Source: Paraphysomonas bandaiensis
Lineage: Eukaryota > Protista > Chrysophyceae
Length of the DNA: 64,000 bases
Direction: 5' to 3'
Assembly: GCA_965644295.1 (NCBI GenBank)
Contig: CBFFRP010000066.1
Coordinates: 186,001-250,000 of the forward strand
Shown: positions 22,601 through 56,522 of the stretch, one piece after another
Layout: each line of letters begins with the position of its first letter
How positions within the stretch are numbered: position 1 is the first letter of the stretch
Notes under the pieces: generated by a model
The model's input: the letters and a program-made list of their open reading frames with translations, nothing else
Told to the model about the DNA's origin: nothing
Databases searched by the model: none
Translations under genes and position numbers: made by a program

Positions 22601-22937
22601 AACTACAATATCTATATAGCGATGGAGTAAGTGTGACAGAATTCCACATATGGGCGCATTGTACTGTGAATGTATGACTGGTAGAGTACATCATACCCCA
22701 CAGAACACACAAGTATGAGATCCACTGCATTGCGTGGGATAACATGCATCGAGAGGTCAACTGGAGTGTTACCGCATGTAGCATGTGTTCATAACTCTCG
22801 TATATTTTATTCCATGCTCTCGTGTGTACATATACATATACATCCATATGAATCCATCCATTCGCTGTGTATGTCTGCTTATCAGTTTATTTCACTCTCG
22901 TATCGTAACGCTCACAGTTGCCTCAGTTGTCTCTCAA

Positions 22938-25500
22938 GAGGCAGCGCTGTGTGACTTCATTCAGGCGACTGATGTTACCTCCATACGGTCTGAGTGGACC
23001 TGTGCGGATGTGGGGAATAAGTGCACTTTCACTGGAGTCACTTGTTCAGGATCGAACATAATCAGAGTGGACTTATATGATGGTGGGATATCAGGATCTC
23101 TCCCCTCATCTATCGGCGATATGACTGCATTGACATATTTGAATATTGGTTACAACTCTCTCACCGGTACTTTGCCCTCATCATTGGGTAATATGACTGC
23201 TTTGACATATTTGGATATTGGTTCCAACTCTCTCAACGGTACTCTCCCCTCATTAATGGGTCAGCTAACTTCTCTTGCTCATAACTATCTACATCACAAT
23301 TCCTTAACGGGTCCTCTCCCCTCATCATTCGTTCAGATGACTTCTATTCGTTCTCTCGGCCTACATTACAATTCCATAACGGGTACTCTCCCCTCATATA
23401 TCGGTGATATGACTGCATTGACATATTTGAATATTGGTTCCAACTCTTTCACCGGTACTCTGCCCTCATCATTGGGTCAGCTGACTTCTCTTGCTCATAA
23501 CTATCTACATCACAATTCCTTAACGGGTCCTCTCCCCTCATCATTGGGTAATATGACTTCTATTCGTTTTCTCCACCTATATGGCAATTCCATAACGGGT
23601 ACTCTCCCCTCATCATTTGGTAATATGACTGCATTGACATATTTGAATATTGGTGACAACTCTCTCAACGGTACTCTGCCCTCATCATTGGGTAAGCTAA
23701 CTATTCTTGTTGAGCTCGAGCTACGTGACAATTCCATAACGGGCCCTCTCCCGTCATCTATCGGTAATATGACTGCATTGGCATATTTGAATATTCGCGA
23801 CAACTCTCTCAACGGTACTCTGCCCTCATCATTGGGTCAGCTGACTTCTCTCAGTTTTCTCCAACTGAGTGACAATTCCATAACGGGTTCTCTCCCCGAC
23901 TCGTTTTCCAGCCTGACTGAATTAGGACATTTAAACCTATATGGCAATATGTTCACAGGTGCCTACCCTTCCGAGCTATGTACAATGACTCAATTAACAA
24001 CATTCCACCTCACACAAAACACTTACCATGAATGCTTGAGACCCACATCTGCACCGACTTCTTTCCCTTCAGGACAACCGACAATTAGCTTGGAAGACGC
24101 AGCGCTATGTGATTTCATTGCGGTGACAAATATTACTTCTAAACAGTCTGAATGGACCTGCGGGAATGTGGGGAATAAATGCAATTTCAGTGGAGTCACC
24201 TGTTCAGAATCGAACGTTTCCTCAGTGGATTTATGGAACTATAAAATAGCAGGATCTCTCCCGTCCTCTATCGGTGATATGACTGCATTGACATATTTGA
24301 ATGTTGGTTACAATTCTCTCGTCGGTACTCTGCCCTCATCATTGGGTCAGCTGACTTCTCTTATTTATCTCCAACTACGTGACAATTCCATAACGGGTTG
24401 TCTCCCGTCCTCTATCGGTGATTTAACTGCATTGACATATTTGAATATTCGCGACAACTCTCTCATCGGTACTCTGTCCTCATCATTGGGTCAGCTGACT
24501 TCTCTTCATGCTCTCCTTCTGTTACATAATTCCATAACGGGTTCTCTCCCCGACTCGTTTTCCAGCCTGACTGAATTAGGATATTTAAGCCTATATGGCA
24601 ATATGTTCACAGGTGCCTACCCTTCCGAGCTATGTACAATGACTCAGTTAACATCATTCCACCTCACACAAAACACTTACCATGAATGCTTGAGACCCAC
24701 ATCTGCACCGACTTCTTTCCCTTCAGGACAACCGACAATTAGCTTGGAAGACGCAGCGCTATGTGATTTCATTGCGGTGACAAATATTACCGCTAAAGTG
24801 TCTGAATGGACCTGCGGGAATGTGGGGAATAAATGCAATTTCAGTGGAGTCACCTGTTCAGAATCGAACGTTTCCTCAGTGGATTTATGGAACTATAAAA
24901 TAGCAGGATCTCTCCCGTCCTCTATCGGTGATATGACTGCATTGACATATTTGAATATTGGATTCAACTCTCTCGTCGGTACTCTGCCCTCATCATTGGG
25001 TCAGCTGACTTCTCTTATTTATCTCCACCTATATCGCAATTCCATAACCGGCTTTCTCCCGTCCTCTATCGGTGATATGACTGCATTGACATATTTGAAT
25101 ATTCGCGACAACTCTCTCATCGGTACTCTGCCCTCATCATTGGGTCAGCTGACTTCTCTCAGTTTTCTCCTTCTATATGGCAATTCCATGACGGGCCCTC
25201 TCCCGTCATATATCGGTGATATGACTGCATTGACATATTTGAATATTGGTGACAACTCTCTCAACGGTACTCTGCCCTCATCATTGGGTCAGCTGACTTC
25301 TCTCAGTTATCTCCAACTGAGTGACAATTCCATTACGGGTTTTCTCCCCGACTCGTTTTCCAGCCTGACTGAATTAGGACATTTAAACCTATATGGCAAT
25401 ATGTTCACAGGTGCCTATCCTACCGAGCTATGTACAATGACTCAATTAACAACATTCCACCTCACACAAAACACTTACCATGAATGCTTGAGACCCACAT
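22938..25500 (+). repeat. Three capped LRR cassettes of paralog A (11, 4 and 6 internal 24-aa units)
   Basis: N-cap AALCDFI..EWTC..KC.F.GVTCS, 72-nt LxxLxxLxLxxNSxTGxLPSS units, C-cap YPSELCTMTQL..YHECLRP. Confidence 0.93.
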
Positions 25501-28500
25501 CTGCACCGACTTCTTTCCCTTCAGGACAACCGACGATTAGTGCACAGCCATCTGGTGAACCAACAGGACAACCATCTGGGACCCCTACAAGACAACCTTC
25601 TGGTGAACCAACAGGACAACCATCTGGTGAGCCAACAGGACAGCCCTCTGGTGAACCTAGTGGACAGCCAACTGGGATCCCTACTGGACAGCCATCTTGT
25701 CAACCTAGTGGATTGCCATCTGGTGAACCAACAGACCAACCATCTGGTCTTCCAACGGGACAGCCGTCTGGCCAACCTAGTGGATTGCCATCGGGATACC
25801 CTACAGGACAACCATCTGGTGAGCCAACAGGACAGCCCTCTGGTGAACCTAGTGGACTGCCAACTGGTATCCCTACTGGGCAGCCATCTTGTCAACCTAG
25901 TGGATTGCCATCCGGACACCCTACAGGACAACCATCTGGCCAACCTAGTGGATTGCCATCGGGACACCCTACAGGACAACCATCTGGTCTTCCAACGAGA
26001 CAGCCTTCTGGTGAACCGACAGGACAGCCCTCTGGTGAACCTACAGGACAGCCATCTGGTCTTCCAACGAGACAGCCGTCTAGCCAACCTAGTGGATTGC
26101 CATCGGGACACCCTACAGGACAACCATCTGGCCAACCTAGTGGATTGCCATCGGGACAACCTACAGGACAACCATCTGGTGAGCCAACAGGACAGCCCTC
26201 TGGTGAACCTAGTGGACAGCCAACTGGGATCCCTACTGGACAGCCATCTTGTCAACCTAGTGGATTGCCATCTGGTGAACCAACAGACCAACCATCTGGT
26301 GAGCCAACAGGACAGCCGTCTGGCCAACCTAGTGGATTGCCATCGGGATACCCTACAGGACAACCATCTGGCCAACCTAGTGGATTGCCATCGGGACAAC
26401 CTACAGGACAGCCGTCTGGTGAACCAACAGGACAGCCCTCTGGTGAACCTACTGGGCAGCCATCTTGTCAACCTAGTGGATTGCCATCCGGACACCCTAC
26501 AGGACAACCATCTGGTCTTCCAACGAGACAGCCTTCTGGTGAACCGACAGGACAGCCCTCTGGTGAACCTACAGGACAGCCATCTGGTCTTCCAACGAGA
26601 CAGCCGTCTAGCCAACCTAGTGGATTGCCATCGGGACACCCTACAGGACAACCATCTGGCCAACCTAGTGGATTGCCATCGGGACAACCTACAGGACAAC
26701 CATCTGGTGAGCCAACAGGACAGCCCTCTGGTGAACCTAGTGGACAGCCAACTGGGATCCCTACTGGACAGCCATCTTGTCAACCTAGTGGATTGCCATC
26801 TGGTGAACCAACAGACCAACCATCTGGTCTTCCAACGGGACAGCCGTCTGGCCAACCTAGTGGATTGCCATCGGGATACCCTACAGGACAACCATCTGGC
26901 CAACCTAGTGGATTGCCATCGGGACAACCTACAGGACAGCCGTCTGGTGAACCAACAGGACAGCCCTCTGGTGAACCTACAGGACAGCCATCTGGTCAAC
27001 CTACAGGACAGCCATCTGGCCGACCTAGTGGATTTCCATCGGGACACCCTTCAGGACTGCCATCTGGTGAGCCAACAGGACAGCCCTCTGGTGAACCTAG
27101 TGGACTGCCAACTGGTATCCCTACTGGGCAGCCATCTTGTCAACCTAGTGGATTGCCATCCGGACACCCTACAGGACAACCATCTGGCCAACCTAGTGGA
27201 TTGCCATCGGGACACCCTACAGGACTGCCATCTGGTGAGCCAACAGGACAGCCGTCTGGTGAACCTAGTGGACAGCCAACAGGTATCCCTACTGGGCAGC
27301 CATCTTGTCAACCTAGTGGATTGCCATCGGGACACCCTTCAGGACAACCATCTGGTGAACCAACAGAACAGCCATCTGGTCTTCCAACGAGACAGCCATC
27401 TGGCCGACCTAGTGGATTGCCATCGGGACACCCTTCAGGACTGCCATCTGGTGAGCCAACAGGACAGCCGTCTGGTGAATCTAGTGGACAGCCATCTGGT
27501 CTTCCAACGAGACTGCCATCTGGCCGACCTAGTGGATTGCCATCGGGACACCCTTCAGGACTGCCATCTGGTGAGCCAACAGGACAGCCGTCTGGTGAAC
27601 CTAGTGGACAGCCAACTGGTACCCCTACTGGGCAGCCATCTTGTCAACCTAGTGGATTGCCATCGGGACACCCTTCAGGACAACCATCTGGTGAACCAAC
27701 AGGACAGCCCTCTGGTGAACCTACAGGACAGCCATCTGGTCTTCCAACGAGACAGCCATCTGGCCGACCTAGTGGATTGCCATCGGGACAACCTACAGGA
27801 CAACCATCTGGTGAGCCAACAGGACAGCCAACTGGTGAACCTACAGGACAGCCGTCTGGTGAGCCTAGTGGACAGCCAACTGGGATCCCTACAGGGCAGC
27901 CATCTGGTCAACCTAGTGGATTGCCATCAGGACACCGTACAGGACAACCATCTCGGGAACCAACAGGACAGCCATCTTGGGATCCAACTGGGCAACCATC
28001 TGGTGAACCAACCGGACAGCCAGCGGGACACCCAACAGGACAACCATCTGGGATCCCAACGAGACAGCCTTCTGGTAAACCGACAGGGCAGCCATCTGGT
28101 CAACCTAGTGGGCTGCCATCTGGTGAGCCTACAGAACAACAATATGGTGAACCGACAGGACAGCTATCTGATGAACCCACAGATCGGCCATCCAGTCAAC
28201 CTACGAGACAGCCATCTGGGGAACCAACAGGACAACCATATGGTGAGCCAACAGGACAGCCGTCTGGTGAACCTAGTGGATTGCCATCAGGACGTCCTGC
28301 TGGACAACCATCTGGTCAACCTACAGGACAACCATCGGGGCACCCTATAGGACAGCCATCTGAGATCCCTACAGCACAGCCATCATGTCAGCCTACAGGA
28401 CAACCATCTGGGATCCCTACAGCAGAACCATCTAGTCCACCAACGAGACAGCCATCTGGCCAACCTAGTGGACTGCCATCGAGTCAACCAACAGGACAGC

Positions 28501-28700
28501 CATCTGGCCAACCTAGTGGATTGCCTTCGGGACATCCTACAGGACAACCATCTGGTCAACCTAGTGGACAGCCATCAGAGCAGTCATCTCGGATCCCTAC
28601 AGCAGGACAGCCATATGGCCAACCTAGTGGACAGGCACCTGGGATATCTACTAGACAGCCAACGAGTCAACCAACAGGACAGCCATCTGGGCAACTACAT
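25501..28700 (+). repeat. 12-nt coding repeat, P[ST]G[QELH] mucin-like stalk of paralog A (~3.2 kb)
   Basis: [16 protein letters not shown] tetrapeptides with higher-order duplications (the 60-mers at 25621 and 26701 are identical). Confidence 0.95.
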
Positions 28701-31700
28701 TCGTCTTTTCCATCGAAGCATGCTCCTTCAGTTGCACACTCACCTGAGATGTTAAGTGTGGGCTGGACTGCATATCGAAATCGCGTTACACTTTCAATTC
28801 ACCTCTCAGACAGAGGCTATGTCTATTGCGCAAGCTTTGAATCTATGGTAATCGTCGACTCTGTAAATTCTGTAATTTCTACAAACAATTTTGACTATGT
28901 GGACGACGTTTCTGTCAACGCCTCAATCTCGATAACATCTCTGACACCGTCCACGAATTACACCCTTTATTGTGTCACGCAAAACAATGACTTGTTAGCT
29001 ACCTCGTATGAAGAAATGCTCTCGAGTGCAATCGTTTGGGAAACTCTCTGTTGTAAGAGCATATTTGTGGATTTGAATATGCTTGTGCTGCAAGAATATA
29101 GTGTGGGCTGGAATATGGTTGCAGTTACCCTTTCGGCAGCTCCGTCATCTGACAGTGATGTGTGGATATCTGCTGAGGTGTCAAATAGCAGTGGTTCGTA
29201 CACTGTATCCCCCTTCCTGGATGACACTGTGACTGTTACACATTCCTCATGGTCGAAAACACACGTATTCACTGTCGCCAACTGTGCGCCGGGACTGTAC
29301 ACACTACAGGTGACTATGATGGATTTTTCAGTGCAGCAAGAGTATGATGTGATCTTCCGAAGTGGGCAGTCGTTCACTGTAGTGCCCTCTACAGTAGAAC
29401 CCAGCACCCCGCGTTTAACGTCAGCACAGTTCTCGAAGAGTGGTGAGTCCGCTGTCCTGAAATTTGATTCACCTACGGACAAGGCGCTATATTCCACATA
29501 TTTCAAGTGCTCTCGTCTCCTGGATGTAGCTGGGGCCTCATCGTCAGACTGTCTCTGGACCTCGGCCACCACACTTACTGTGTATTTCAAAGGGTCTCTT
29601 CTTCCTGAAGTAGGTGATAGTGTGGTGCTACTGCAGGGTCAACTGCGAGCTCAATGCGCCTTAACAACATCAGAGTGTACCGGCTGGGCTACTGTGAACA
29701 GAACAGAAATGGTTTTAGCTGCCCCCTACGACCCCATATCACCCACACTCGTTGTGACATACCCAAAGGTCTCCGGTCCCTGCGACAGACCTGTGATCGA
29801 TATTACTGCCTCCTCTGGTTCTGGTGGTCGACCGTGGAAACAGTTTAACATCACTGTGACCAGTGTTAGCGATACTGTTTATACAGTTCAGAAATGGCTT
29901 ACAGAGAATTACATGATTAGCCCACCGCCTGCAATGCCAGCCCAACTATTTCAAGGCGGTTATAGGTACATCTTTGAGCTATGGCTGTGCAATTTTCTCG
30001 GTGAGTGCAGCTCTGCCATAGCTGTCATAGAAAGAGTGAATGATAGTCTGCCGTATGTTTCTATGGTGGGACAACTCTCTCGACAGATATTCACTTACAC
30101 TCCTCTGGCACTGCAGTCAAATGCTTTTCTATCTGAATGCGACGGTTCTGCATCGTATTCCAACTTAATATATGATTGGAAAATATTCGAGGATGAAGTG
30201 GAGCACTCTGAGTTAGTGTCGTTGTCGAATGACCCGAGAAAATTCAACTTGCCACCTTATTCTTTGAACGTAAGTTCTGTTTACGAAATAAAGTTAACTG
30301 TTACAAGCTCTCTGTCGGGGTTGTCGTCGTCAGTACTGGTATACGTGTCAGTAGTTCAGTCCGATATTGTGGCAATCATTGAGGGAGGATCACAGCAATC
30401 ATTGCGAATCGGCGGCAGTGTGTTATTGGATGCATCTGGCAGTTATGATAAAAATATTCCACCCGAATTACGCCCTCCAGCTGAGAGCAGTGGGTTTGAA
30501 TTCCGTTGGACTTGTATGCAGTTGTTTCCAGCTCTCCTTCTGCGGTGTGATGATTTGAATATACAATCGAATACTATCACAACTCCACATTTGCTACGTA
30601 TATTTACTACGAATAAGACAAAGGAGCACTCGGAGTATTCGATAAGTGTGGAGGTGCTTAGTGTTGCTGACGGCAGGCAAGCAGAGAGCTCAGTGGTTGT
30701 ACGAGTGACTGAAGCATTGGCTCCGATTGTGTCTATAAGGAGGAGTGGAGCAACGAGTGGTGTCAACCCTTCGTCTTCTCTGGTTTTGCTGGGAAGTGTG
30801 GAATTAAGTGTGGCCCAATCAGCATTTTGGACTATCAACGAGCCGTCTGTTGCTCTGGCTTCTATCACATCTACGACGACGTATGTATCACTTGCGAAAG
30901 GGCTGCACTCCATCAATTTGGTAGTTAGTGCCGGCTCTATTCCTGGTCGGTCGGTTCCCTATGTGTTTTCACTTACCTGTGACTCGTCCGCAGCATCATT
31001 GGCAGTGAGTTTTAATACTCCTCCTCATCCTGGTCAACTTTCAGTGTTCCCTCCCTCAGGTATAGCGTGGGATACAGTCTATACACTCATTGCGGAGTCT
31101 TGGACTGATGAAGACTTGCCATTGTCCTATGTAATGGGTTATGTGGAGGATGGCCACTATCCAATTGTGAGAAGTCGGTTGGAGACGTCTTATGCCAGCT
31201 CCACATTTCCATCTGGGGACAGTATGAATGGATACACATTGTTGTGTTATGTTCGTGTGCTAGATAGTTTGGATGCAGTTTCTCTGTTGCAGACGTCGGT
31301 TGTGGTTCGTTCCAATACAGCCCTCTCGGCAACATTAGCTAGCGAGAAGTTTCGATTGGAACTAGAATCGAGTGGAAGCAAAATTGAGTTGACGAAGCAA
31401 ATTCTCTCATTGTCTAGTTCTTATCTGAACACCAAGAACTGCTCCTCAGCACCCAACTGTACCACTTTGAACCGCCACGAGTGTTTCAGTGTTGATCATA
31501 CATGTGGATCATGCTTGACTGGGTATGTGGGAGAAGAGGGTGCATCTAACCATGGTTGTGTACCAGAAAGCGATTTGTTAACACCTTCTCCAGGTGTGGT
31601 TTGTGGCACTGACGATGACTGCAGTGTATGGGAGTACTGTAAGATTACGGAGTCACCCTCCGTTTGTGATTATCGTCGGCAGACATGTACCAGTAACTGC

Positions 31701-34700: not shown

Positions 34701-35731
34701 TTGAGACGAAATCAGAGGAAGAGTGAGTTGACTATGATGCCCTTATGAACCATTGCTGACATCTCATATTTGCTCTGTTGTGTTTTTGCAGATTTCGCCA
34801 TACCTACGTTGTTTCAAAGTTTGTAAAAGGCATAATGTGGTCTTTGGTTGTGCTGTTGAATCTCTGCTTTATATTTTACTCCATGTTACGAGGTCTGCAA
34901 AGAGGACTCGAGTGGCAGATGATGTTCCTTTTTGCATGCATACTGCAATTTCTATTTGAGATTTTGCTGTATGAGTCGTCTGAAGTCGCCATAATTCATT
35001 TTGTAATTCCAAGTTTAGTCCGGTATGAAGTAATGGCGGCTCAAACTGCACTCTACAACGCAATTGAAAGTATCAGCAATATGTCAGAAGAAACAAACGA
35101 TCTGATACTTGACACGCCTCAGTATTTGTTTGTATCCGTAAATGTTGCCAAATTTTTCCCTCATCAATTGGAGAGCGCAATTGTACGGTCCTATCACAGT
35201 CTTTATCCGGGTGCACTGGCTAAGAATTGGAAAGACAGGAGAAAATTTTACTGTAGAAGAGGTGCTGTGGTTCCTTCCGGTCGAACTTATACAAGACGTT
35301 TCTCTGTGATAGCTCTGTTATCTCTCTTGGTTCAACAACTCGGCGCAGTGAGCAGCACTTGGCAGCGCATGATCATTCATCTTCTCCAGCCACTCTTTGC
35401 AGTATCTCTGATCATGATGTGGCAATATATGTGGTATCATCCCATATATTTCGTCGTCCTACTGGTACTTGCATTGTATGTGGGATACCGCTATCTCTCT
35501 TCGTGGAAAAATCAGGCTGAAGAGCGAATTTCAAATAAAGTCGGTCAATTCCCAGCGTTAGTTTCACCCGATACCGCTGCTTCTGGTGTTCCTGGAGAGG
35601 AGGGAACGCATCGTCTGAATGGCAATTCTCTTGTAGCCACGGAAGAGGGACACAGTCCACGTCACCTCTCCAGTGACCCTATCCATCAGCAGCGACACAT
35701 GAACGATTTTCCCTCTATTTTAGAAGTGGGA

Positions 35732-37227: not shown

Positions 37228-37920
37228 CCTGACATTCAAAGAAGTGTAAGGATAATAATCTGAAATATATGTTTTGTGATTTTAACAATATTTGCTTTTT
37301 ATCAGAATTCGTGACGATTATGACAACGATGATTCAACCGTATTTGAACTCTGATATATTCTGTGGAGGACTAAAATCAAGACCAACAGAAGTATGCATA
37401 TCGTGCGACAGGATTTGCGTGGTTTCCAGCGCATACAAGAAACAGAAAGTGAGCTATTGCAGTCGAGGTATGCCGTATTCGGTAATGTAATATTTTGTAA
37501 CAGATTTCATTTTTAGTTCAATTACAGTTAGTCATAACTACATAACTACACTTATAAGAAGTAATATATTTACGTCCAAATCAATTAAATTTATTGTATT
37601 ACTACAGAATAGTACTATCAGAGAATGTGCTTGCATAAACTTACAAATCGTTTGCTAGTGTTCGACAATACTAAGTTCTCAAAATCTTTGGAATCGACAT
37701 TCATAATATGACGATATATGTTGAAAGTGTGTTGAATTATGCAACCGAGATATCCCCATTTTGTCTCAAAAGTAGTATTTCTCACCTTAATTGGGCTCAA
37801 CAGAACGCTCATATCAGCACCGGGATAACATAGACATACAACTTCAATATTCGGGTCAACAGAAACTCTCTTAATTATGATATTGTCAGTCATATGTATG
37901 TGATTTCATTATATTACACA

Positions 37921-39739: not shown

Positions 39740-39743
39740 GTAG

Positions 39744-39965
39744 TGAATGTCTGATTATTAGCAATAGAGGCGTGTAAGAGTCAGAACTAATGTAGCAAAA
39801 CAATTTAACTAACTTGTGCTTAACTCTGATACCCTCCTATTTAGCGCTACGAAAGCTGCTTGTGCGTCACCGCAAGCATCAAGATGCAACCACTTACACA
39901 TTATCGCTCAAAGAAAACGCAGTAAGCACAAGCAGAATGTTGATATATCTGACATCTACTAACTT
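39744..39965 (-). mobile_element. Retroposon copy 4 (3' part only, subfamily 2)
   Basis: tgaatgtctgattattagcaatag... and gctgcttgtgcgtcaccgcaagca match the 3' end. Internal part matches 57610-57690. Confidence 0.72.
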
Positions 39966-40233
39966 TAAGAGTAAACGACATATACATCTGGACTTCTACC
40001 TACTAGCAAATCCATACTTTATTTATGTGTCGCTAGTTCACCATATTTTGCTAATTCCTGGAACGTAGAAGTTTCTTATCTCCATCAAGAGATCCCATTA
40101 GCTTTTATAAGTAATCCGAGTATGAATACAGACTTTTAGGTAGAATTGTTCTCAGTATCTCCTTGTTATTAAGTGTTAGTGTTATCATGCTATGAACCAT
40201 GTACCTCATAGCATAGATATGACTATCGTATAG

Positions 40234-47100: not shown

Positions 47101-50100
47101 ACATATTTGCATATTCGTTCCAACTATCTCAACGGTACTCTTCCCTCATCATTGGGTCGGCTGACTTCTCTTAGTTATCTCAACATAGGTAGCAATTCCA
47201 TAACGGGCCCCCTCCCGTCATCATTGGGTGATTTGACTGCATTGACATATTTGGATTTTGGTTACAACTCTCTCAGCGGTGCTCTGCCCTCATCATTGGG
47301 TCAGCTGACTTCTCTTGTTAGTCTCTTTTTATATGTCAATTCCATAACGGGTCCTCTCCCGTCATCTATGGGTGATATGAATGCATTGACAGTTTTCAGT
47401 ATTGATTCCAACTCTTTCACCGGTACACTACCCTCATCATTGGGTCAGCTGACTTCCCTTGTTAGGTTCTATATAACTGACAATTCCATAACGGGTCCTC
47501 TCCCCTCATCTATCAGTGATATGACTGCACTGACACTTTTGAATTTTGGTTCCAACTCTCTCAACGGTACTCTGCCCTCATCATTGCGTCAGCTGTCTTC
47601 TCTTGGTTATCTCAGTCTATCTGGTAATTCCTTAACGGGTCCTCTCCCCTCGACATTGGGTCAGCTAACTACTCTCAGTGTTCTCTATCTATATGGTAAT
47701 TCCTTATCGGGTCCTCTCCCCGACTCTTTTTCCAGTCTAACCAAATTACGACTTCTAAGGGGTGAGGACAACATGTTCACAGGTGTATATCCTTCCGAGC
47801 TATGCACAATGACTCAATTAACAACGTTCTACCTGACACAAAACACTTACCATGAATGCTTGAGACCAACATCTGCACCGACTCCTTTCCCTACAAGACA
47901 GCCATCTGGGATCCCTACAGGACAACCGTCAATTAGTGGACAGCCATCTAGTGAGCCATCAGCACTGCCATCATATCAACCCACGGGCGAGCCATCTGGG
48001 ACCCCCACAAGACAGCCATCTGGTGAACCAACAGGTCACCCTTCATGCCAGCCTACAGGTCAGCCATCTGGGATCCCTACAGGCCAGCCGACATATCCAC
48101 CTACAGGACAGCCATCTGGTGAACCTAGTGGACAGCCATCCGGTCAACCCACGAGTGAGCCATCTGGGATCCCTACAGGACAGCCGTCATATCCACCTAC
48201 AGGACAGCCATCTGGTGAACCTAGTGGACAGCCATCTGGTGAACCTAGTGGACAGCCATCCGGTCAACCCACGAGTGAGCCATCTGGGATCCCTACAGGA
48301 CAGCCGTCATATCCACCTACAGGACAGCCATCTGGTGAACCTAGTGGACAGCCATCAAGTCAACCTACAGGACAGCCATCATGTCAACCCACGGGTGAGC
48401 CATCTGGGATTCCTACAAGACATCCATCTGGTGAACCTACAGGGCAACCATCACATCAACCTACAGGACAGCCATCTGGTGAACCTAGTGGACTGCCATC
48501 GAGTCAACCTACGAGTGAGCCATCTGGGATCCCCACAGGACAGCCGTCACATCCTCCTACAGGACAGCCATCTGGTGAACCTAGTGGACTGCCATCACGT
48601 CAACCTACAGGACAGCCATCATGTCAACCCACGGGTGAGCCTTCTGGGATTCCTACAAGACAGCCATCTGGTGAACCTAGTGGACATCCATCTGGTGAAC
48701 CTACAGGGCAACCATCACATCAACCTACAGGACAGCCATCTGGTGAACCTAGTGGACTGCCATCGAGTCAACCTACGAGACAGCCATCAAGTCATCCATC
48801 CCGAATTCCCACAGGACAACCATCTGGCCAACCTACAGGAAAACCGTCATGTCAACCCACAGGTGAGCCATCTGGGCAACCTAGTGGATTGCCATCAGGA
48901 CGCCCTACAAGACAATCATATGGGATCCCAACAGGACAGCCATCTGGGTTATTACATTCGACTTTTCCATCGAAGCATGCTCCTTCAGTTGCACCTTTAC
49001 CTGAGATATTACGTATGGACTGGACTGCGTATCAAGATCGCGTTACACTTTCAATTCAGCTCTCAGACAGAGGCTATGTCTATTGCGCAAGCTATGAATC
49101 TATGGTAATCGTCGACTCTGTAAATTCTGTAATTTCTACAAACAATTTTGACTATGTGGACGACGTTTCTGTCAACGCCTCAATCTCGATAACATCTCTG
49201 ACACCGTCCACGAATTACACCCTTTATTGTGTCACGCAAAACAATGACTTGTTAGCTACCTCGTATGAAGAAATGCTCTCGAGTGCAATCGTTTGGGAAA
49301 CTCTCTGTTGTAAGAGCATATTTGTGGATTTGAATATGCTTGTGCTGCAAGAATATAGTGTGGGCTGGAATATGGTTGCAGTTACCCTTTCGGCAGCTCC
49401 GTCATCTGACAGTGATGTGTGGATATCTGCTGAGGTGTCAAATAGCAGTGGTTCGTACACTGTATCCCCCTTTCTGGATGACACTGTGACTGTTACACAT
49501 TCCTCATGGTCGAAAACACACGTATTCACTGTCGCCAACTGTGCGCCGGGACTGTACACACTACAGGTAACTATGATGGATTTTGCAGTGCAGCAGGAGT
49601 ATGATGTGATCTTCCGAAGTGGGCAGTCGTTCACTGTAGAGCCCTCTGCAGTAGAACCCAGCACCCCGCGTTTAACGTCAGCACAGTTCTCGAAGAGTGG
49701 TGAGTCCGCTGTCCTGAAATTTGATTCACCTACGGACAAGGCGCTATATTCCTCATATTTCAAGTGCTCTCGTCTCCTGGATGTAGCTGGGGCCTCATTG
49801 TCAGACTGCCTTTGGACCTCGGCCATCACACTTACTGTGTATTTCAAAGGGCCTCTTCTTCCTGAAGTGGGTGATAGTGTGGTGCTGCTACCGGGTCAAC
49901 TGCGAGCTCAATGCACCTCCACAACATCAGAGTGTACCGGCTGGGTAACTGTGAACAGAACAGAGATGGTTTTAGTTGCCCCCTACGACCCCATATCACC
50001 CACGCTCGTTGTGACATACCCAAAGGTCTCCGGTCCCTGCGACAGACCTGTGATCGATATTACTGCCTCCTTTGGTTCGGGTGGTCGACCATGGAAACAC

Positions 50101-53100
50101 TTTAACATCACTGTGACCAGTGCTAGCAATACTGTTCATACAGTTCAGAAATGGCTTACAGAGAATTACGTGATTAGCCCACCGCCTGCAGTACCAGCCC
50201 AACTATTTCAAGGCGGTTATAGGTACATCTTTGAGCTATGGCTGTGCAATTTTCTCGGTGAGTGCAGCTCTGCCATAGCTATCATAGAAAGAGTGAATGA
50301 TAGTCTGCCGTATGTTTCTATGGTGGGAAAACTCTCTCGACAGATATTCACTTACACTCCTCTGGCACTGCAGTCAAATGCTTTTCTATCTGAATGCGAC
50401 GGTTCTGCGTCGTATTCCAACTTAATATATGATTGGAAAATATTCGAGGATGAAGTGGAGCACTCTGAGTTAGTGTCGTTGTCGAGTGACCCGAGAAAAT
50501 TTAAGTTACCACCTTATTCTTTGAACGTAAGTTCTGTTTACGAAATAAAGTTAACTGTGGCAAGCTCTCTGTCGGGGTTGTCGTCGTCAGTACTGGTATA
50601 CGTGTCAGTAGTTCAGTCCGATATTGTGGCAATCATTGAGGGAGGATCACAGCAATCATTGCGAATCGGCGGCAGTGTGTTATTGGATGCATCTGGCAGT
50701 TATGATAAAAACATTCCACTCGAATTACGCCCTCCAGCTGAGAGCAGTGGGTTTGAATTCCGTTGGACTTGTATGCAGTTGTTTCCAGCTCTCCTTCTGC
50801 GGTGTGATGATTTGAATATACAATCGAATACTATCACAACTCCACATTTACTACATATATTTACTACGAATATGACAAAGGAGCACTCGGAGTATTCGAT
50901 AAGTGTGGAGGTGCTTAGTATTGCTGACGGCAGGCAAGCAGAGAGCTCAGTGGTTGTACGAGTGACTGAGGCATTGGCTCCGATTGTGACTATAAGCAGG
51001 AGCGGAGCAACGAGTGGTGTCAACCCTTCGTCTTCTCTGGTTTTGCTGGGAACTGTGCAATTAGATGTCCCCCAATCAGCATTTTGGACTATCAACGAGC
51101 CTTCTGTTGCTCTGGCCTCTATCACATCTACGGCGACGTATGTATCACTAGCGAAAGGGCTATACTCCATCAATTTGGTAGTTAGTGCCGGCTCTATTCC
51201 TGGTCGGTCGGTTCCCTATGTGTTTTCACTTACCTGTGGCTCGTCCACAGCATCATTGACAGTGATTTTTAACGCTCCTCCTCAGCCTGGTCAACTTTCA
51301 GTGTTCCCTCCCTCAGGTATAGCGTGGGATACAGTCTATACACTCATTGCGGAGTCTTGGACTGATGAAGACTTGCCATTGTCCTATGTAATGGGTTATT
51401 TGGAGAATGGCCACTATCCGATTGTGAGAAGTCGGTTGGAGACGTCTTATGCTAGCTCCACATTTCCACCTGGGGACAGTATGAATGGATACACATTGTT
51501 GTGTTATGTTCGTGTGCTGGATAGTTTGGATGCAGTTTCTCTGTTGCAGACGTCGGTTGTGGCTCGTTCCAATACAGCCCTCTCGGCAACATTAGCTAGC
51601 GAGAAGTTTCGATTGGAACTAGAATCGAGTGGAAGCAATATTGAGTTGACGAAGCAAATCCTCTCATTGTCTAGTTCTTATCTGAACACCAAGAACTGCT
51701 CCTCAGCACCCAACTGTACCACTTTGAACCGCCACGAGTGTTTTAGTGTTGATCATACATGTGGATCATGCTTGGCTGGGTATGTGGGAGAAGAGGGTGC
51801 ATCTAACCATGGTTGTGTACCAGAAAGCGATTTGTTAACACCTTCTCCAGGTGTGGTTTGTGGCACTGACGATGACTGTAGTGTGTGGGAGTACTGTAAG
51901 ATTACGGAGTCTCCCTCCATTTGTGATTATCGTCGGCAGACATGTACCAGTAACTGCTCGCGTCGAGGCACTTGCATACTTCAGGACAGTGACAGCGGAG
52001 CTGCTGTGACCGAGTGTCTATTGATTGACTCTTCATGTGAGGCGAAGTGTCTATGTGATAAAGGATTCAGTGGCTTGTTTTGTGAGTATACAGCTGAGGA
52101 GGCGAGAGTACGCACTGATATGAGAGAAGCCAATCTGAATGAGTTAGATGGTGTCACTAGAGTGGATGATCCAACTCTGGAGTCGATTTTGGAGTGGCAA
52201 CAAATTTTAGTTACACTTACTACGCAATCCAGTGAACTATCTGAAGTGGGGACAGAGCATGGTCTCAATATTGCTGATGTGATTTTAAGTAATGCTACAG
52301 TGCAAGCGGTGGACACATATGAGGCGTATAGTGACACGCTGACAGCAGTAGATAGCATTGCCACTGTGTCAATGAATATTTTGTTATCCTCATTGGCCTC
52401 GTCGAATATCACTCGTCACCGCAGCCTCCTTTTCAACGAGAGCTCATTCATCGCCTCCCGAGTTGCGTCCGCGCTGGACACGTATGGGTCAGGTGTAAGA
52501 AGATCTCTGATTGAGGGCCAACGCGGGAATCAGATTTTACGTAAGTCATTTCAACAAATCACAGAAGTTTTTTCCTCTTCAGTTAATAGTGAAGATATTT
52601 CAATGGCAGTACCACAGTCATTTGCAAAGACGTCGGCTGGAATACTGCCCTCGTCTCTCCAATTTCGTAGAAACAGTACACGGCACCCCTCGCGTAGTTT
52701 GAAGGTTTCATTGAGTAGTATTCGGTCGAAGCTTTATGACAATGGGAATTACAATTCGGATGTATTGCAATTGGCTATTGATGGCTCGATATACACCAAT
52801 GATTCTTTCAAGATTATTATACGAAATAATAATCCTATCTACTACGGCCGAGTACACGCCAACAATACTACATTTAACGTGACTTGTGATCGTGATGTGT
52901 ACACCACTCACATATTACCCTGTCACCAGTCAGCTGTAAACGTCACTTGTAATGGCACAGCCGCAAAAGTACGGCTACGTTGCCCGGATGTTTTCTCTGC
53001 ACCTCATTGCCGAGTCTTGTCTACCAGAGGAAACTTCAACTGCACTGTTGACTCCTACACTGCGTGGAACACCACATGCTTGTGTCATCTCACTTCATTA

Positions 53101-56100
53101 GGATATCACTTCGGAGGTGATGGACTGTCATCGTATGACACTAATCCTTCTCCCTCTCAGCGACGCGTGGACGAGACAGGGCAAGAGCAGATGATTCTGC
53201 GAGAGTCAGGGTATGTGGAGCTCGTGAGCACATCAGAGTACGTTGCTGGCGACTTTACTGCAACAGTTGTTCTGGCTCAGGAGTTCGATTCACCTGAGGA
53301 CTTGCAAGCAGTACTTTTGGTGGTGTCGTTGTTCGGAACAATTTGGGGCATGGGGTTCCTTGCAATATGTTATATGTTTGCAACGTCAGCGTATGGTTCC
53401 AAAAGTGAGAAGTTAAAACAGTGTGTGACGACCCCGAGTCTTGACCTCAATAGTGCTTCCCCAGATACAATTTCTACAGATTCGATGAAAATGCGTCTTC
53501 ATTCATATGTAAAGGAAGTTTTCCCGGCAGTGTACAACACAAAATCGCCGTGGAGTCGATTGTGGAGAGAGCTTAGGAGCCATCATCGCTACATAGGTTT
53601 ATTTCTCTCGAAAGACTATACGAACACAGTGAACCACAGGATTCGAGTGTTGCTACACCTGTTAACAACACTTTCTATGCTGATGTTTTTCCTGGCGTTG
53701 TTGTATGACTTTGAGGTAATTGCATTAATTATTATCACTCAACAATATTTATAGTATATATTGTTTTACGTAATGCTAATGATGTTCATATAGTACCCCG
53801 AAGACAATGGAAAATGTGAGGCTCATACCACTTCCTCACAATGCGCAACTGAGAAGTCGATGCTAGATTCATCACAGAGAGTGTGTCAGTGGGTTGAAGA
53901 TGATGACACGATCGGGGGATACTCGTGTGTATTTGTTAGCCCTGAGGTTACACTGAAGGTACATAAACTCCCTTTTCCATTTTAGCATTGACCTTTACAT
54001 CTCGTCTATATGTGTTCATTAGGCTATCATGATTGCCTCTGTTATATGCTCCATCTTCAGCATGTTCGGAAATGCAATTGTCGACTTTATATTTGACATT
54101 CTAGCTGCTCCCACTGCATGTTGCTCTAGGCAAAATGCTGCTGAGCAAATAAATGGTCACATCCAACAGCGTGTGGCCCAATTTGGCAGACGAGTGTCGG
54201 CCATAACTACAAATTTATCTGATCAATTTAGGAGTAGTGTGGGGAGGAAGAGAAAAACGTCGTCTTTTATAACAATTGAATCCACACGTCACCTGCCATA
54301 TTCTTGCATTGCTGCCCAGCAATTGGCGTTATCTTCACTTGGCAGTATCGTGGCAGAAGTAAACCCATCCTTACAAACCATTGAGCGTCGTTCCAGTCGT
54401 AGTCAGCGCTTAAGCAGAAATACGGATACACCCCACCCGCAGTCGAGTAATTTCCAGTCCTATTACGCCCTCTGTCCTGTTAGCCGGCGGTCTGAGGAAG
54501 TGGATAAAGTGGCAGCGATTCCGTCTACTATTCTGTCCATCTCAACGGATGATTTATATGCAGACCTGTGCAGCGATATTACGGAGCAAATGAGATACCT
54601 AAGAACCACTAGACAAAAGGATGCATTTATGATGGCCTGGTGGTATGTATAATGTTGTGCTCTTTATTTTGTTGCGTTTAATGTGTTTCTTGCAGCTTAG
54701 AAAGTAATAATCAATTCAAGCCAGAGTATGCGAGTATTATTGAGAAAACACTGAAGGAACACCTTGCGTTTGTAAAGAAGGAAGTGGCTCTCAAGCGGAA
54801 TAAATTGAATCAAATCGAAGACATGCATATTGGTCTGGAGCTGCTCCACATGTTTGTGCTGGATGTCCTCGGTCGAGGTAAAAAGCGTTCATACGTTGCG
54901 CGTGCGATATTGCAATCTTCACCACAATAAATGTGCTTATCTACTTGGTGTGTGTAGCATCACCGGCAGCCAAAATATTTGAGACGAAATCAGAGGAAGA
55001 GTGAGTTGACTATGATACACTAATGAGCCATTGCTGATATCTCATATTTGCTGTGTTGTATTTTTGCAGATTTCGCCACACCTACGTTGTTTCAAAGTTT
55101 GTAAAAGGCATAATGTGGACTTTGGTTGTGCTGTTGAATCTTTGCTTTATATTTTACTCCATGTTACGAGGTCTGCAAAGAGGACTCGAGTGGCAGATTA
55201 TGTTCCTTTTTGCATGCATACTGCAATTTCTATTTGAGATTTTGCTGTATGAGTCGTCTGAAGTTGCCATAATTCATTTTGTCATTCCAAGTTTAGTCCG
55301 ATACGAAGTTATGACTGCTCAAACTGCACTCTACAACGCAATTGAAAGTATCAGCAATATGTCAGAAGAAACAAATGATCTGATACTTGATACGCCTCAG
55401 TATTTGTTTGTATCCGTAAATGTTGCCAAATTTTTCCCTCATCAATTGGAGAGTGCAATTGTACGGTCCTATCACAGCCTTTATCCGGGGGTACTGGCTA
55501 AGAATTGGAAAGACAGGAGAAAATTTTACTGTAGAAGAGGTGCAGTGGTTCCTTCCGGTCGAAATTATACAAGACGTTTCTCTGTGATAGCTGTATTGTC
55601 TCTCTTGGTTCAACAGCTCGGTGCAGTGAGCAGCACTTGGCAGCGCATGATCATTCATCTTCTCCAGCCACTCTTAGCAGTATCTATGATCATGATGTGG
55701 CAATATATGTGGTATCACCCCATATATTTCGTCGTCCTACTGGTACTTGCATTGTATGTGGGATACCGCTATTTCTCCTTGTGGAAAAATCAGGCTGAAG
55801 AACAAAATTCAAATAAAGTCGGTCTATTCCCAGCGTTAGTTTTACCCGATTCATCTGCTTCTGGTGTTCCTGGAGAGGAGGGAACGCATCGTCTGAATAC
55901 TGACAGCATTCTTCTAGCCACGGAAGAGGGACACAGTCCCGGTCACCTCTCCAGTGACCCTATCCATCAGCAGCGACGCATGAACGATTTTCCCTCTATT
56001 TTAGAAGTGGGGCCCGACACCACCATTGGCCCACCTCTATCAACAACTGCACTTGATCCCATTGTTGCTGCTGACACTGATACGGAAGGTGCTGCTGTTG

Positions 56101-56522
56101 CGAATACTTCTTATGGCGATTCTAGTAATTTTCGACCTGCTGAGAAAACCAGCCTCGCACTTCAGAATAATACCGCACCCGATGGTTCCATTGCAATGAG
56201 TAATGTTGCGCATCTTTTAGGTGTGGATTTCTCCTCTGATAGTGAGCTCGAAAGTCCTGACACCACCATTGGCCCACCTCTATCAACAACTGCACTTGAT
56301 CCCATTGTTGTTGCGGACACAGATACCGGAGGTGCTGCTGTTGCGAATACTTCATATGGCGATTCTAGTAATTTTCGACCTGCTGAGAAAACCAGCTTCG
56401 CACTTCAGCATAAAACCGCACCCGATGGTTCCATTGCAATGAGTAATGTTGCGCATATTCTAGGTGTGGATTTCTCCTCTGATAGTGAGCTCGAAAGTCC
56501 TGACATATTCAACGAAGTGTAA
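41137..56522 (+). CDS. Giant LRR-mucin-REJ(PKD1-like)-EGF-GPS-like multi-TM surface receptor, paralog B, 6 exons, ~5013 aa
   Basis: Exons 41137-53715, 53794-53958, 54023-54642, 54696-54877, 54958-55000, 55070-56522 join in frame with GT-AG introns. Signal peptide; REJ-type motifs (LDASGSYD, FNAPP.PGQLSVFP.SG..WTDEDLPLSY); EGF-like CS..GTC..CLCDKGFSG..C; TTCLCHLT; several TM helices. Confidence 0.9.
41227..47880 (+). repeat. Eight capped LRR cassettes of paralog B (2,7,5,5,5,9,9,9 internal units), including 3x750-nt and 3x1014-nt near-identical tandem blocks
   Basis: Equivalent positions at 42652, 43402, 44152 (750 apart) and 44881, 45895, 46909 (1014 apart). Confidence 0.95.
47881..48950 (+). 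repeat. P[ST]xx mucin-like stalk of paralog B (~1.1 kb)
   Basis: 12-nt coding repeat, [16 protein letters not shown]. Confidence 0.93.
56013..56500 (+). repeat. 243-nt (81-aa) tandem repeat x2 in tail of paralog B
   Basis: Units start at 56013 and 56256; homologous to the 219-nt unit of A plus an NFRPAEKT-containing insert. Confidence 0.9.

What the first reader, a model, noticed from the sequence alone, without database searches (positions are those of the whole stretch)
22848..56522. Tandem giant receptors with combinatorial, hypervariable LRR cassettes on a polycystin-like (REJ/GPS/multi-TM) base
Seen: variation at three nested scales. (1) Exposed residues of each 24-aa unit vary (AHNYLHH, RSLGLHY, VELELRD, IYLHLYR, VDLRLHS, GDLLLYN, VSLFLYV, VRFYITD) between almost invariant DNA scaffolds. 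(2) Units per capped cassette range from 2 to 11. (3) Cassette number is 3 vs 8 and stalk length ~3.2 vs ~1.1 kb. The REJ-TM part is highly similar between paralogs. Units are reused: B cassette 1 matches the last two units of cassette 2, and LGLHYNSITG occurs in both genes. Established: concave-face LRR diversification underlies VLRs and plant receptors; PKD1 joins LRR, REJ and GPS. Inference: a recombination-diversified recognition system (pathogen, prey or mate) in a protist, working without introns between modules.
Basis: partly seen in the sequence, partly recalled or inferred. Interest (0 to 1): 0.8.

Follow-up and report, generated by a model that had tools for sequence, protein, structure and literature searches.

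The report
Tandem giant LRR-cassette polycystin-like receptors
Two neighbouring giant genes of a probable diatom encode surface receptors that carry strings of plant-type leucine-rich-repeat heads on a mucin-like stalk above a polycystin-1-like membrane base; the heads are being reshuffled fast in the germline, but nothing shows a programmed diversity generator.

Summary
Gene A (22848-37249) has 3 capped LRR cassettes. Gene B (41137-56522) has 8. Units are exactly 24 aa, with 2-11 per cassette, and the stalks are 3.2 and 1.1 kb.

The base is polycystin-1-like on three counts:
- REJ domain, E about 1e-44.
- A predicted GAIN fold; the top nine PDB matches are GAIN domains.
- A fold match of a homologue's TM1-TM5 to polycystin-1, Z 14.7.

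It lacks PLAT, the polycystin channel half and a conserved GPS cleavage motif. The genome (62.5 Mb, with silicon transporters) holds about 90 such REJ genes. The scan has already noted this family on other DNA of this genome.

"Combinatorial, hypervariable" is only partly supported:
- B's eight cassettes are four types, two of them triplicated at 99.3-99.9% identity.
- Heads and tails of cassettes have incongruent histories, so the arrays are recombination mosaics.
- LRR arrays are about 80% identical although the bases have dS 0.058.
- Concave-face codons give pN/pS 1.2-2.05 against 0.44 for the scaffold. Significance is marginal.

This fits germline unequal crossing-over, gene conversion and relaxed-to-diversifying selection, as in plant receptor clusters. 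Gene A carries one TAG just before TM1.

The parts
22848..33449 (+). Gene A exon 1: signal peptide, 3 LRR cassettes, PT stalk, REJ, EGF-like region, GAIN-like domain, TM1-TM2. It is interrupted by one in-frame TAG.
   Evidence: ORF and translation; Pfam LRR, PT and REJ; exon end mapped from B, with a conserved GT donor.
22944..25490 (+). Gene A LRR cassettes A1 (22944-24038), A2 (24102-24692) and A3 (24756-25490).
   Evidence: Cap motifs and 24-aa register. A2 and A3 are 93.8% identical over 512 nt, and A3 is 144 nt (two units) longer than A2. A2 matches plant LRR-RLK ectodomains in the PDB, best GSO1 at E 4e-119.
25491..28700 (+). Gene A mucin-like P/S/T/G/Q stalk, 24-nt period, about 126 copies.
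   Evidence: TRF finds the array at 25544-28576; Pfam PT repeat at E 3e-209.
30162..31331 (+). Gene A REJ domain (protein residues 2439-2828).
   Evidence: Pfam PF02010 at E 5.6e-44; the genome search places the match at C66:216162-217331.
32931..32933 (+). In-frame TAG in gene A where B has CAG. It lies between the GAIN CxC strand and the last conserved strand before TM1, and an ATG follows it directly.
   Evidence: Alignment of A and B; position within the model. A and B show equal lineage-specific N/S, so the stop is recent or tolerated.
33533..37249 (+). Gene A exons 2-6: 33533-33697, 33761-34380, 34434-34615, 34680-34722 and 34792-37249. These encode TM3 onwards and a cytoplasmic tail with a 219-nt repeat in 5.8 copies.
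   Evidence: Mapped from B; all GT-AG sites are conserved and all frames are open. Tail array at 35961-37226.
41137..53715 (+). Gene B exon 1 (4193 codons): signal peptide, 8 LRR cassettes, stalk, REJ, EGF-like region, GAIN-like domain, TM1-TM2.
   Evidence: donor site read from the sequence.
41233..47862 (+). Gene B LRR cassettes B1 to B8. B3-B5 form a 750-nt tandem triplication (42658-44820). B6-B8 form a 1014-nt tandem triplication (44884-47862).
   Evidence: 1-5 mismatches between copies.
47863..48955 (+). Gene B stalk, about 35 copies of the 24-nt unit.
   Evidence: array at 47938-48788; stalk end.
50419..51588 (+). Gene B REJ domain (protein residues 3095-3484).
   Evidence: Pfam at E 7.2e-44; the genome search places the match at C66:236419-237588.
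52084..53301 (+). Gene B GAIN-like juxtamembrane domain: a five-helix subdomain and a beta-sandwich with 8 conserved Cys, including C-x-C.
   Evidence: AlphaFold model with pLDDT 77.8 and pTM 0.70. The top nine Foldseek matches are adhesion-GPCR GAIN domains, E 4.5e-8 to 2e-3. Family alignment.
53794..56522 (+). Gene B exons 2-6: 53794-53958, 54023-54642, 54696-54877, 54958-55000 and 55070-56522. They encode a Cys-rich extracellular loop, TM3, a long cytoplasmic loop, further TM helices, and a tail with a 243-nt repeat in 2 copies.
   Evidence: GT-AG sites and frames read from the sequence. Hydropathy. Contiguous homologue P0001 aligns to B's exon 1 tail, exon 2 and exons 4-6, but not to the exon 3 loop. 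Tail array.

Best explanation
What it is. A and B are recent tandem duplicates within a family of about 90 giant polycystin-1/REJ-like surface receptors in a probable diatom. Each protein has these parts, from outside to inside:
- a signal peptide;
- a string of autonomous, capped plant-type LRR domains (3 in A, 8 in B) joined by roughly 20-30-aa proline/threonine-rich linkers;
- a long mucin-like stalk;
- REJ and EGF-like modules;
- a GAIN-like domain next to the membrane;
- a polycystin-1-like TM1-TM5 bundle plus about 3 more helices;
- an acidic, serine-rich repeat tail.

How it likely works (inferred). The stalk would hold the LRR heads beyond the cell covering. Ligands would bind the concave LRR faces. 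Binding or pulling would then be passed through REJ and GAIN to the membrane domain, as proposed for polycystin-1 and adhesion GPCRs.

How the heads evolve (shown). The LRR arrays change in the germline in four ways. Unequal crossing-over acts in 72/144-nt unit registers and in 750/1014-nt cassette registers. Caps are homogenised within each gene. Heads and tails are exchanged between cassettes. Concave-face codons are unconstrained or under diversifying selection. This is birth-and-death and concerted evolution of the kind seen in plant receptor-like gene clusters, not a programmed somatic system.
For: Architecture.

Gene model.

Polycystin-like base:
- REJ at E about 1e-44.
- GAIN fold: the top nine PDB matches are all GAIN domains, best 4dlq_A at E 4.5e-8.
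- TM base of homologue P0001 (31% identical to B across the base) modelled at pLDDT 83 and pTM 0.80. Its top match is 8z6b_A, polycystin-1 residues 3063-3610, with Z 14.7, rmsd 3.5 and 201 residues aligned. The next row has Z 7.5.

Family:
- 91 REJ matches in the 62.5-Mb genome.
- Paralogues carry C-type lectin and LamG heads.
- The TM base has 2051 representative clusters in public data, some with FG-GAP or NHL heads.
- Silicon transporters are present.

LRR type: plant LRR-RLK ectodomains are the best PDB matches.

Recency: for A versus B the base has dS 0.058 and dN/dS 0.46. Introns are 89.6% identical and the downstream exons (2-6) 97%.

LRR dynamics:
- Triplicated cassettes at 99.3-99.9% identity.
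- A 144-nt super-repeat.
- Incongruent head and tail identity matrices.
- LRR arrays only about 80% identical between A and B.
- The same cassette type is amplified elsewhere, for example 8 or more identical 738-nt copies on C552.

Selection: concave positions give pN/pS 1.43 over all pairs, 1.9 in 20 independent close pairs, and 1.2-2.05 with 130 units. The scaffold gives 0.43-0.62.
Against: - No expression, localisation or ligand data exist.
- Evidence for omega > 1 is statistically weak. At the strictest pairing, p is 0.37. Comparing repeat units is not a population or orthologue test.
- Near-identical triplicated cassettes argue for avidity or adhesion rather than diverse recognition.
- Gene A has a premature TAG before TM1 and may be non-functional or secreted.
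- The TM fold match was obtained on a 31%-identical metagenomic homologue, not on the window's own spliced protein. The joined model was deliberately not built.
- PLAT, the polycystin channel half and a conserved HL-T cleavage site are absent, so signalling by the polycystin route is only an analogy.
Confidence: 0.72

Rival explanations
1. Multivalent adhesin or mechanical tether. The repeated, often identical LRR heads on a mucin stalk mainly give avidity for a common polymer. Candidates are mucilage, a substratum, a sibling cell in a chain, or a bacterial biofilm. The REJ-GAIN-TM base would report tension. Copy-number change would tune reach and avidity rather than specificity.
For: Six of B's eight cassettes are near-identical triplicates. 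C552 has 8 or more identical cassettes. Stalk length varies threefold between A and B. GAIN domains and polycystin-1 are linked to adhesion and mechanosensing (established knowledge). Relatives carry lectin, FG-GAP and NHL heads typical of adhesion proteins.
Against: Concave-face residues differ strongly between cassette types, and pN/pS there is at or above 1. That is not expected if all heads bind one invariant polymer.
Confidence: 0.3
2. Gamete or mating-type recognition receptors. They would be analogues of the sea-urchin receptor for egg jelly, evolving fast under sexual selection.
For: The base is REJ-GAIN-multi-TM, like suREJ and PKDREJ. In the stramenopile Ectocarpus, a REJ+GPS protein with 6-7 TM helices is male-gamete specific and under positive selection (PMC4700764). 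In the diatom Pseudo-nitzschia multistriata, LRR receptor-like genes change expression during sex, and two show Ka/Ks above 1 (PMC5485032).
Against: About 90 family members with many head types is far more than mate recognition would need. No expression data could be obtained here.
Confidence: 0.15
3. Programmed (somatic or clonal) diversification of LRR cassettes, in the manner of lamprey VLRs or antigenic-variation systems.
For: Only circumstantial: modular units with conserved caps, reuse of units, and recent recombination events.
Against: Both genes are complete germline ORFs with caps in place. No incomplete acceptor gene flanked by silent donor cassettes was seen. The recombination events seen are ordinary tandem duplications and conversions. 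No read data could be examined.
Confidence: 0.03
4. One or both loci are decaying pseudogenes, or partly assembly artefacts of a repeat-rich region.
For: Gene A has a TAG at 32931-32933. A sister gene (L025) has an interruption inside its LRR array. Near-identical kilobase repeats are hard to assemble.
Against: Gene B is open over 15 kb in six exons with canonical splice sites. Apart from the one TAG, all of A's exons are open and their splice sites conserved. A's lineage-specific N/S is 1.24, the same as B's 1.37 and well below neutral. Exons are more conserved than introns. The repeat copies differ by 1-5 substitutions, which artefactual copies would not.
Confidence: 0.12

Closest known systems
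Polycystin-1 / PKDREJ / sea-urchin suREJ family (PKD1-like proteins)
   Same: A large ectodomain with LRR (and, in paralogues, C-type lectin) heads. A REJ domain. A GAIN-type domain immediately before TM1. A TM1-TM5 bundle matching polycystin-1 residues 3063-3610 (Z 14.7, tested on a homologue).
   Different: No PLAT domain in the first cytoplasmic loop. No C-terminal polycystin channel-like six-helix half. About 8 hydrophobic segments rather than 11. No PKD Ig-like repeats. The GPS HL-T motif is not conserved in the family. The heads are strings of complete plant-type LRR domains on a mucin stalk. The family has about 90 members in one protist genome.
Ectocarpus Esi0130_0068 (REJ + GPS + 6-7 TM, male-gamete specific; PMC4700764)
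   Same: A stramenopile REJ-GPS-multi-TM protein with a similar number of TM helices. It shows evidence of positive selection in the ectodomain.
   Different: It is 1427 aa, with no LRR cassettes and no mucin stalk. Sequence relatedness to A and B was not tested here.
Plant LRR receptor-like kinases and proteins (FLS2, GSO1, MIK2, Cf/RLP clusters)
   Same: The 24-residue plant-specific LRR consensus and an LRRNT_2-type N-cap. Variation is concentrated in the xxLxLxx face. Evolution is by tandem duplication, unequal crossing-over and diversifying selection.
   Different: The plant proteins have one LRR domain, a single TM and a kinase or short tail. Here there are up to 8 separately capped LRR domains per protein, no kinase, and a polycystin-like multi-pass base.
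Slit (four tandem capped LRR domains) and lamprey VLR
   Same: Slit also has several independently capped LRR domains in one chain. VLRs also have invariant caps with variable internal modules.
   Different: Slit is secreted, with a fixed domain number. VLRs are assembled somatically from donor cassettes, and nothing here indicates that.
Adhesion GPCRs
   Same: A GAIN domain adjacent to the first TM helix, and large modular adhesion-type ectodomains.
   Different: The membrane domain is not a class-B 7TM. The best GPCR rows in the VIA-align search have Z below 6, and Foldseek finds no match with E under 0.75.

Membership tests
Polycystin-1-like (PKD1/PKDREJ/suREJ) | REJ domain (PF02010) | tested here: met
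   E 5.6e-44 in A and 7.2e-44 in B, over about 400 of the 452 profile positions.
Polycystin-1-like (PKD1/PKDREJ/suREJ) | GAIN domain directly before TM1 | tested here: met
   Model of B residues 3650-4085 has pLDDT 77.8. The nine best PDB matches are all GAIN domains, E 4.5e-8 to 2.4e-3.
Polycystin-1-like (PKD1/PKDREJ/suREJ) | GPS motif with an autoproteolytic HL-T/S site | tested here: inconclusive
   Pfam GPS gives no hit in the gene or anywhere in the genome. A and B read C-L-C-H-L-T-S, but paralogues keep only C-x-C. Cleavage itself cannot be tested in silico.
Polycystin-1-like (PKD1/PKDREJ/suREJ) | PLAT domain in the loop after TM1 | tested here: not met
   No PF01477 hit at E up to 1. 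The loop is about 90 aa and is predicted helical in the homologue model.
Polycystin-1-like (PKD1/PKDREJ/suREJ) | TM1-TM5 N-terminal membrane bundle of polycystin-1 | tested here: met
   Tested on homologue P0001:1380-2200, not on the window's spliced protein. The match is 8z6b_A residues 3063-3610, with Z 14.7, rmsd 3.5 and 201 residues aligned; the next row has Z 7.5. Foldseek alone missed it.
Polycystin-1-like (PKD1/PKDREJ/suREJ) | C-terminal polycystin channel-like six-TM half (PF08016), 11 TM in all | tested here: not met
   No PKD_channel hit. There are about 8 hydrophobic segments. The structural match ends at polycystin-1 residue 3610.
Plant-type LRR receptor ectodomain | 24-residue LxxLxxLxLxxNxLxGxLPxxLGx repeats with an LRRNT_2 cap | tested here: met
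   The register is perfect over all cassettes. PF08263 scores 24.7 bits against a cut-off of 20.7 in B. Plant RLK ectodomains are the best PDB matches and include the N-cap.
Plant LRR-RLK / RLP | Single TM followed by a kinase (RLK) or short tail (RLP) | tested here: not met
   No kinase domain was found. The base is multi-pass REJ-GAIN.
Adhesion GPCR | Class-B seven-helix GPCR domain after GAIN | tested here: not met
   Foldseek finds no significant GPCR match. In the VIA-align search CD97 has Z 5.3, against Z 14.7 for polycystin-1.
VLR-like somatic LRR assembly | An incomplete germline gene completed from flanking donor cassettes, with somatic variants | not testable with these tools
   Both genes are complete ORFs, which argues against this reading.

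The most novel reading that the evidence does not exclude
The LRR-cassette subfamily comprises at least 15 genes, seven or more of them on this contig. It may be a germline repertoire of self/non-self or mate-recognition receptors in diatoms. New specificities would arise continuously by unit and cassette shuffling together with diversifying selection on the concave face. Signals would be read out through a polycystin-1-like GAIN-TM base. This would be a third, independent use of LRR diversification, after plant receptors and lamprey VLRs, coupled to an animal-type polycystin chassis.
Probability: 0.25. Interest if true: 0.8.

Novelty: new variant of a known kind. Interest (0 to 1): 0.62.

Why it matters
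Diatoms interact with bacteria, viruses, grazers and mates, yet their surface receptors are almost unknown. This locus shows two things together. A polycystin-1/REJ-GAIN chassis, best known from animal kidney cilia and sperm, has been multiplied to about 90 genes in one probable diatom. It has also been fitted with interchangeable heads, here strings of plant-type LRR domains that are visibly being duplicated, recombined and changed at their binding faces.

That yields concrete candidates for recognition or adhesion receptors. It offers a natural series for studying how GAIN/REJ domains couple to a polycystin-type membrane bundle that has no PLAT domain or channel half. It is also a case of very recent kilobase-scale cassette amplification that could be followed among strains.

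I found no description of this diatom family in the paper library searched. That is not proof that none exists.

Tried and rejected
No read-based check was possible of the assembly, expression, splicing, the TAG, or strain and clonal variation.
The first batch was cut to 10 kb per region. The family survey therefore rests and on 32 loci.
- Pfam found no GPS, PLAT or PKD_channel.
- Foldseek against the PDB and the ESM Atlas shape search gave nothing useful for the membrane domain. Only the exhaustive VIA-align search found polycystin-1.
- The word search with A's LRR region returned only generic plant and bacterial LRR proteins, none listed with a REJ domain. It neither named the organism nor found a multi-cassette LRR-REJ relative. 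The only other LRR+REJ protein seen is P0003, from a metagenome.
- P0154 (5012 aa) was checked as a possible annotation of gene B. It is a different relative, with FG-GAP heads.
Exons were searched one by one by reference, and the contiguous homologue P0001 stood in for the membrane domain.
- I considered reading A's TAG-ATG junction as a gene-level mimic of GPS cleavage, with N- and C-terminal fragments encoded separately. I left this as an unexplained observation, because reinitiation after a 10-kb ORF is implausible and B has the same ATG.
Full report
OBSERVATION

The window holds two giant + strand reading frames, 22785-32933 and 41137-53754. Their translations begin with the same signal-peptide-like sequence (MNPSIRCVCLLISLF...).

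Parsing by the cap motifs ALCDFI and YHECL gives 3 cassettes in gene A and 8 in gene B. Between the caps the sequence falls into an exact 24-residue register of the form LxxLxxLxLxxNxLxGxLPxxLGx. Two unit subtypes mostly alternate (consensus SSIGDMTALTYLNIGSNSLNGTLP and SSLGQLTSLSYLYLYDNSITGPLP), and TRF sees them as a 144-nt super-repeat. Internal units number 11, 4 and 6 in A, and 2, 7, 5, 5, 5, 9, 9, 9 in B.

B1's tail equals B2's tail at 96.6% over 381 nt.

The stalks are P/S/T/G/Q repeats with a 24-nt period. A's is 3.2 kb with about 126 copies. B's is 1.1 kb with about 35 copies. From the stalk end onwards, A and B are 92.8% identical over 8.2 kb.

Four corrections apply:
- The scaffolds are conserved but not 'almost invariant'. 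Nucleotide identity is 84-89% within subtypes, and scaffold pS is 0.40 over all pairs.
- B's eight cassettes are four types. B3, B4 and B5 differ by 2-5 substitutions in 750 nt. B6, B7 and B8 differ by 1-3 in 1014 nt.
- Pfam's GPS model does not hit.
- Gene A has an in-frame stop.

GENE MODELS

Reading the sequence after B's long ORF gives five short GT-AG introns of 53-80 nt. The six exons are 41137-53715, 53794-53958, 54023-54642, 54696-54877, 54958-55000 and 55070-56522, about 5013 codons in all.

A contiguous metagenomic homologue, P0001, aligns to B's exon 1 tail, exon 2 and exons 4-6, which supports the model. It did not align to the exon 3 cytoplasmic loop.

All splice sites and frames are conserved in A, whose exons end or start at 33449, 33533-33697, 33761-34380, 34434-34615, 34680-34722 and 34792-37249.

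Exons were searched separately by reference, and P0001 stood in for the membrane domain.

A differs from B by a single C-to-T change that makes TAG at 32931-32933. With the close paralogue L009 as outgroup, A-specific and B-specific changes have the same nonsynonymous-to-synonymous count ratio, 1.24 and 1.37, well below neutral. The downstream exons (2-6) are 97% identical against 89.6% for the introns. The stop is therefore recent, tolerated, or an allele or error. Reads could not be consulted.

THE BASE

Pfam finds REJ in both genes (E about 1e-44), PT repeats, LRR families, a weak LRRNT_2 and a weak EGF. It finds no GPS, PLAT or PKD_channel, even at E up to 1.

I aligned the region between the EGF-like part and TM1 with 16 relatives: gene A, 10 genomic paralogues and 5 metagenomic proteins. 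The alignment shows eight invariant or nearly invariant cysteines, including a C-x-C, followed by a conserved strand (SGxLEV) and TM1. The H-L-T that follows C-x-C in A and B is not conserved in paralogues.

The AlphaFold model (pLDDT 77.8, pTM 0.70) has a five-helix subdomain and a beta-sandwich. Its nine best PDB matches are all GAIN domains of adhesion GPCRs: latrophilin, BAI2/3, CELSR1, GPR110, GPR126 and GPR56. The best is 4dlq_A at E 4.5e-8.

Hydropathy shows TM1 and TM2 in exon 1, a Cys-rich loop in exon 2, TM3 in exon 3, a long cytoplasmic loop, and about five more hydrophobic segments in exon 6.

The membrane region of P0001 has 2051 representative clusters at E up to 1e-3 among 1.8 billion proteins. 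It is 31% identical to B across the base. Folded with 53 relatives it gives pLDDT 83 and pTM 0.80.

Foldseek found nothing for this model. The exhaustive VIA-align search put the polycystin-1 chain of the PC1/PC2 complex first: 8z6b_A, residues 3063-3610, covering TM1 to TM5, with Z 14.7, rmsd 3.5 Å, 201 residues aligned and 17% identity. The next row has Z 7.5.

The base is thus polycystin-1-like in REJ, GAIN and TM1-TM5. It lacks PLAT and the channel-like C-terminal half.

THE FAMILY AND THE ORGANISM

The assembly is 62.5 Mb in 669 contigs. It has 91 REJ matches, nearly all inside open frames of 2000-7800 codons. It also carries several silicon-transporter genes, so it is most probably a diatom. 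Its name is not given.

Other REJ paralogues carry C-type lectin or laminin-G-like heads. Relatives elsewhere carry FG-GAP or NHL propellers.

Cassettes close to those of A and B (60-73% identical in protein) lie next to REJ matches at seven or more places on this contig. They also occur on C191, C124, C600, C552, C526, C366, C114 and C566. More distant LRR heads sit on further REJ genes. C552 has eight or more identical 738-nt cassettes. The gene at C66:299-313 kb has about 80 units in ten or more cassettes.

Earlier notes of this scan describe the same family on other DNA of this genome, including the figure of about ninety genes. My counts agree with them independently.

HOW THE LRR ARRAYS EVOLVE

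For A versus B the base has dS 0.058 and dN/dS 0.46. The signal peptide and first N-cap are 95% identical. The LRR arrays, however, reach only about 80% identity in the best local alignments and differ in structure.

Identity matrices for heads and tails of cassettes are incongruent:
- A1's N-cap is 90-95% identical to B1-B3 but 74-75% to A2/A3.
- C-caps are gene-specific, at 94-99% within a gene and 80-83% between genes.
- The last two internal units pair B1 with B2 (97%), B3 with B6 (97%) and A1 with A3 (94%).

A3 is 144 nt (two units) longer than A2.

These are the marks of unequal crossing-over and gene conversion in unit and cassette registers. They confirm a recombination-mosaic history in the germline.

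SELECTION

Site-wise, the five xxLxLxx positions (10, 11, 13, 15, 16) have the highest entropy, 2.5-3.05 bits. Over all unit pairs they give pN/pS 1.43, against 0.53 elsewhere.

In 20 phylogenetically independent close pairs the values are 1.9 and 0.62.

With 130 unique units from A, B and three paralogues, the concave positions give 1.21, 1.74 and 2.05 at pairing thresholds of 90, 85 and 80% identity. The scaffold gives 0.43-0.44 throughout. One-sided Fisher p values for omega above 1 are 0.37-0.46, 0.02-0.04 and 0.003-0.004 respectively.

The concave face is therefore at least unconstrained and probably under diversifying selection. The test compares repeat units rather than orthologues, and it is only marginally significant.

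INTERPRETATION

The best-supported reading is a germline-evolving family of surface receptors or adhesins. Multiple plant-type LRR heads on a mucin stalk would bind external ligands. A REJ-GAIN-polycystin-like base would transduce binding or tension. The ligand and the signalling route are inferred.

The identical triplicated cassettes favour multivalency at least as much as diversity. Gamete recognition is a live alternative. The Ectocarpus REJ-GPS protein with 6-7 TM helices is male-gamete specific and positively selected (PMC4700764). LRR receptor-like genes respond to sexual cues in Pseudo-nitzschia (PMC5485032).

A programmed, VLR-like diversification has no support, because both genes are complete germline ORFs.

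NOVELTY AND SCORE

All of the following are known:
- REJ/GPS multi-TM proteins in stramenopiles.
- Plant-type LRR receptor-like proteins in diatoms.
- Polycystin-1's combination of LRR, lectin, REJ and GAIN.

The variant here has four distinguishing features:
- Several separately capped plant-type LRR domains on a mucin stalk.
- A polycystin-1-like base without PLAT or the channel half.
- Membership of a family of about 90 genes.
- Very recent cassette amplification and mosaic recombination.

I rate it a new variant of a known kind, with interest 0.62. The scan had already met the family elsewhere in this genome.

Noticed in passing
window 32931-32936: Gene A's TAG is followed at once by ATG (TAGATG). 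It falls in the low-confidence loop between the GAIN C-x-C strand and the last conserved strand before TM1, the topological place where GAIN domains are cleaved. As written, A would give a secreted ectodomain, plus a separate ORF (32934-33488 onwards) starting just before the Stachel-like strand and TM1. B has CAGATG at the same place.
   Followed up: partly
window 35781-37226 and 56016-56505: The cytoplasmic tails are themselves tandem arrays that differ in copy number. A has 183/219-nt units, about 7-8 copies at 98-99% identity. B has a 243-nt unit in 2 copies at 95%. The units are acidic and serine-rich and end in DFSSDSELE.
   Followed up: partly
G000:C552:15653-23262 (not fetched): Eight or more LRR cassettes at an exact 738-nt spacing, with identical scores, lie upstream of a REJ match at C552:11507-12673. 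The amplification is larger than in gene B.
   Followed up: no
L025 (G000:C66:298450-308449): A sister gene 50 kb downstream on the same contig has about 80 LRR units in ten or more cassettes. It contains large internal segmental duplications, and its frame is interrupted at L025:5966-6045 inside the LRR array, by either an intron or a break.
   Followed up: partly
L013, L015 (G000:C431 and C24): Other REJ-family paralogues carry two C-type lectin domains, or a laminin-G-like domain plus C-type lectins, instead of LRRs. This echoes the lectin heads of polycystin-1 and sea-urchin REJ.
   Followed up: partly
P0154 (public protein, 5012 aa): A relative from public data has four tandem FG-GAP propeller-like cassettes separated by PT linkers. 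They sit on a long PT stalk above the same REJ-GAIN-TM base. This is the same beads-on-a-string design with a different head.
   Followed up: no
L017 (G000:C58), about 2812-3000 on the - strand: In this paralogue the frame is broken by several stops between the GAIN C-x-C strand and the SGxLEV strand. This is probably an intron at the same place where gene A has its TAG.
   Followed up: no
window 37986-38186 and 39814-40068: Two similar short ORF fragments (..RKLLVRRRKHQGATTSALS.. and ..RKLLVRHRKHQDATTYTLS..) lie in the A-B intergenic region. They may be copies of the small retroposon family that another reader noted in this window.
   Followed up: no
window 22848 / 41137 and about 37500 / 56770: A-B similarity starts exactly at the ATG and ends about 250 nt after the stop codon, so the promoters are not shared.
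   Followed up: partly
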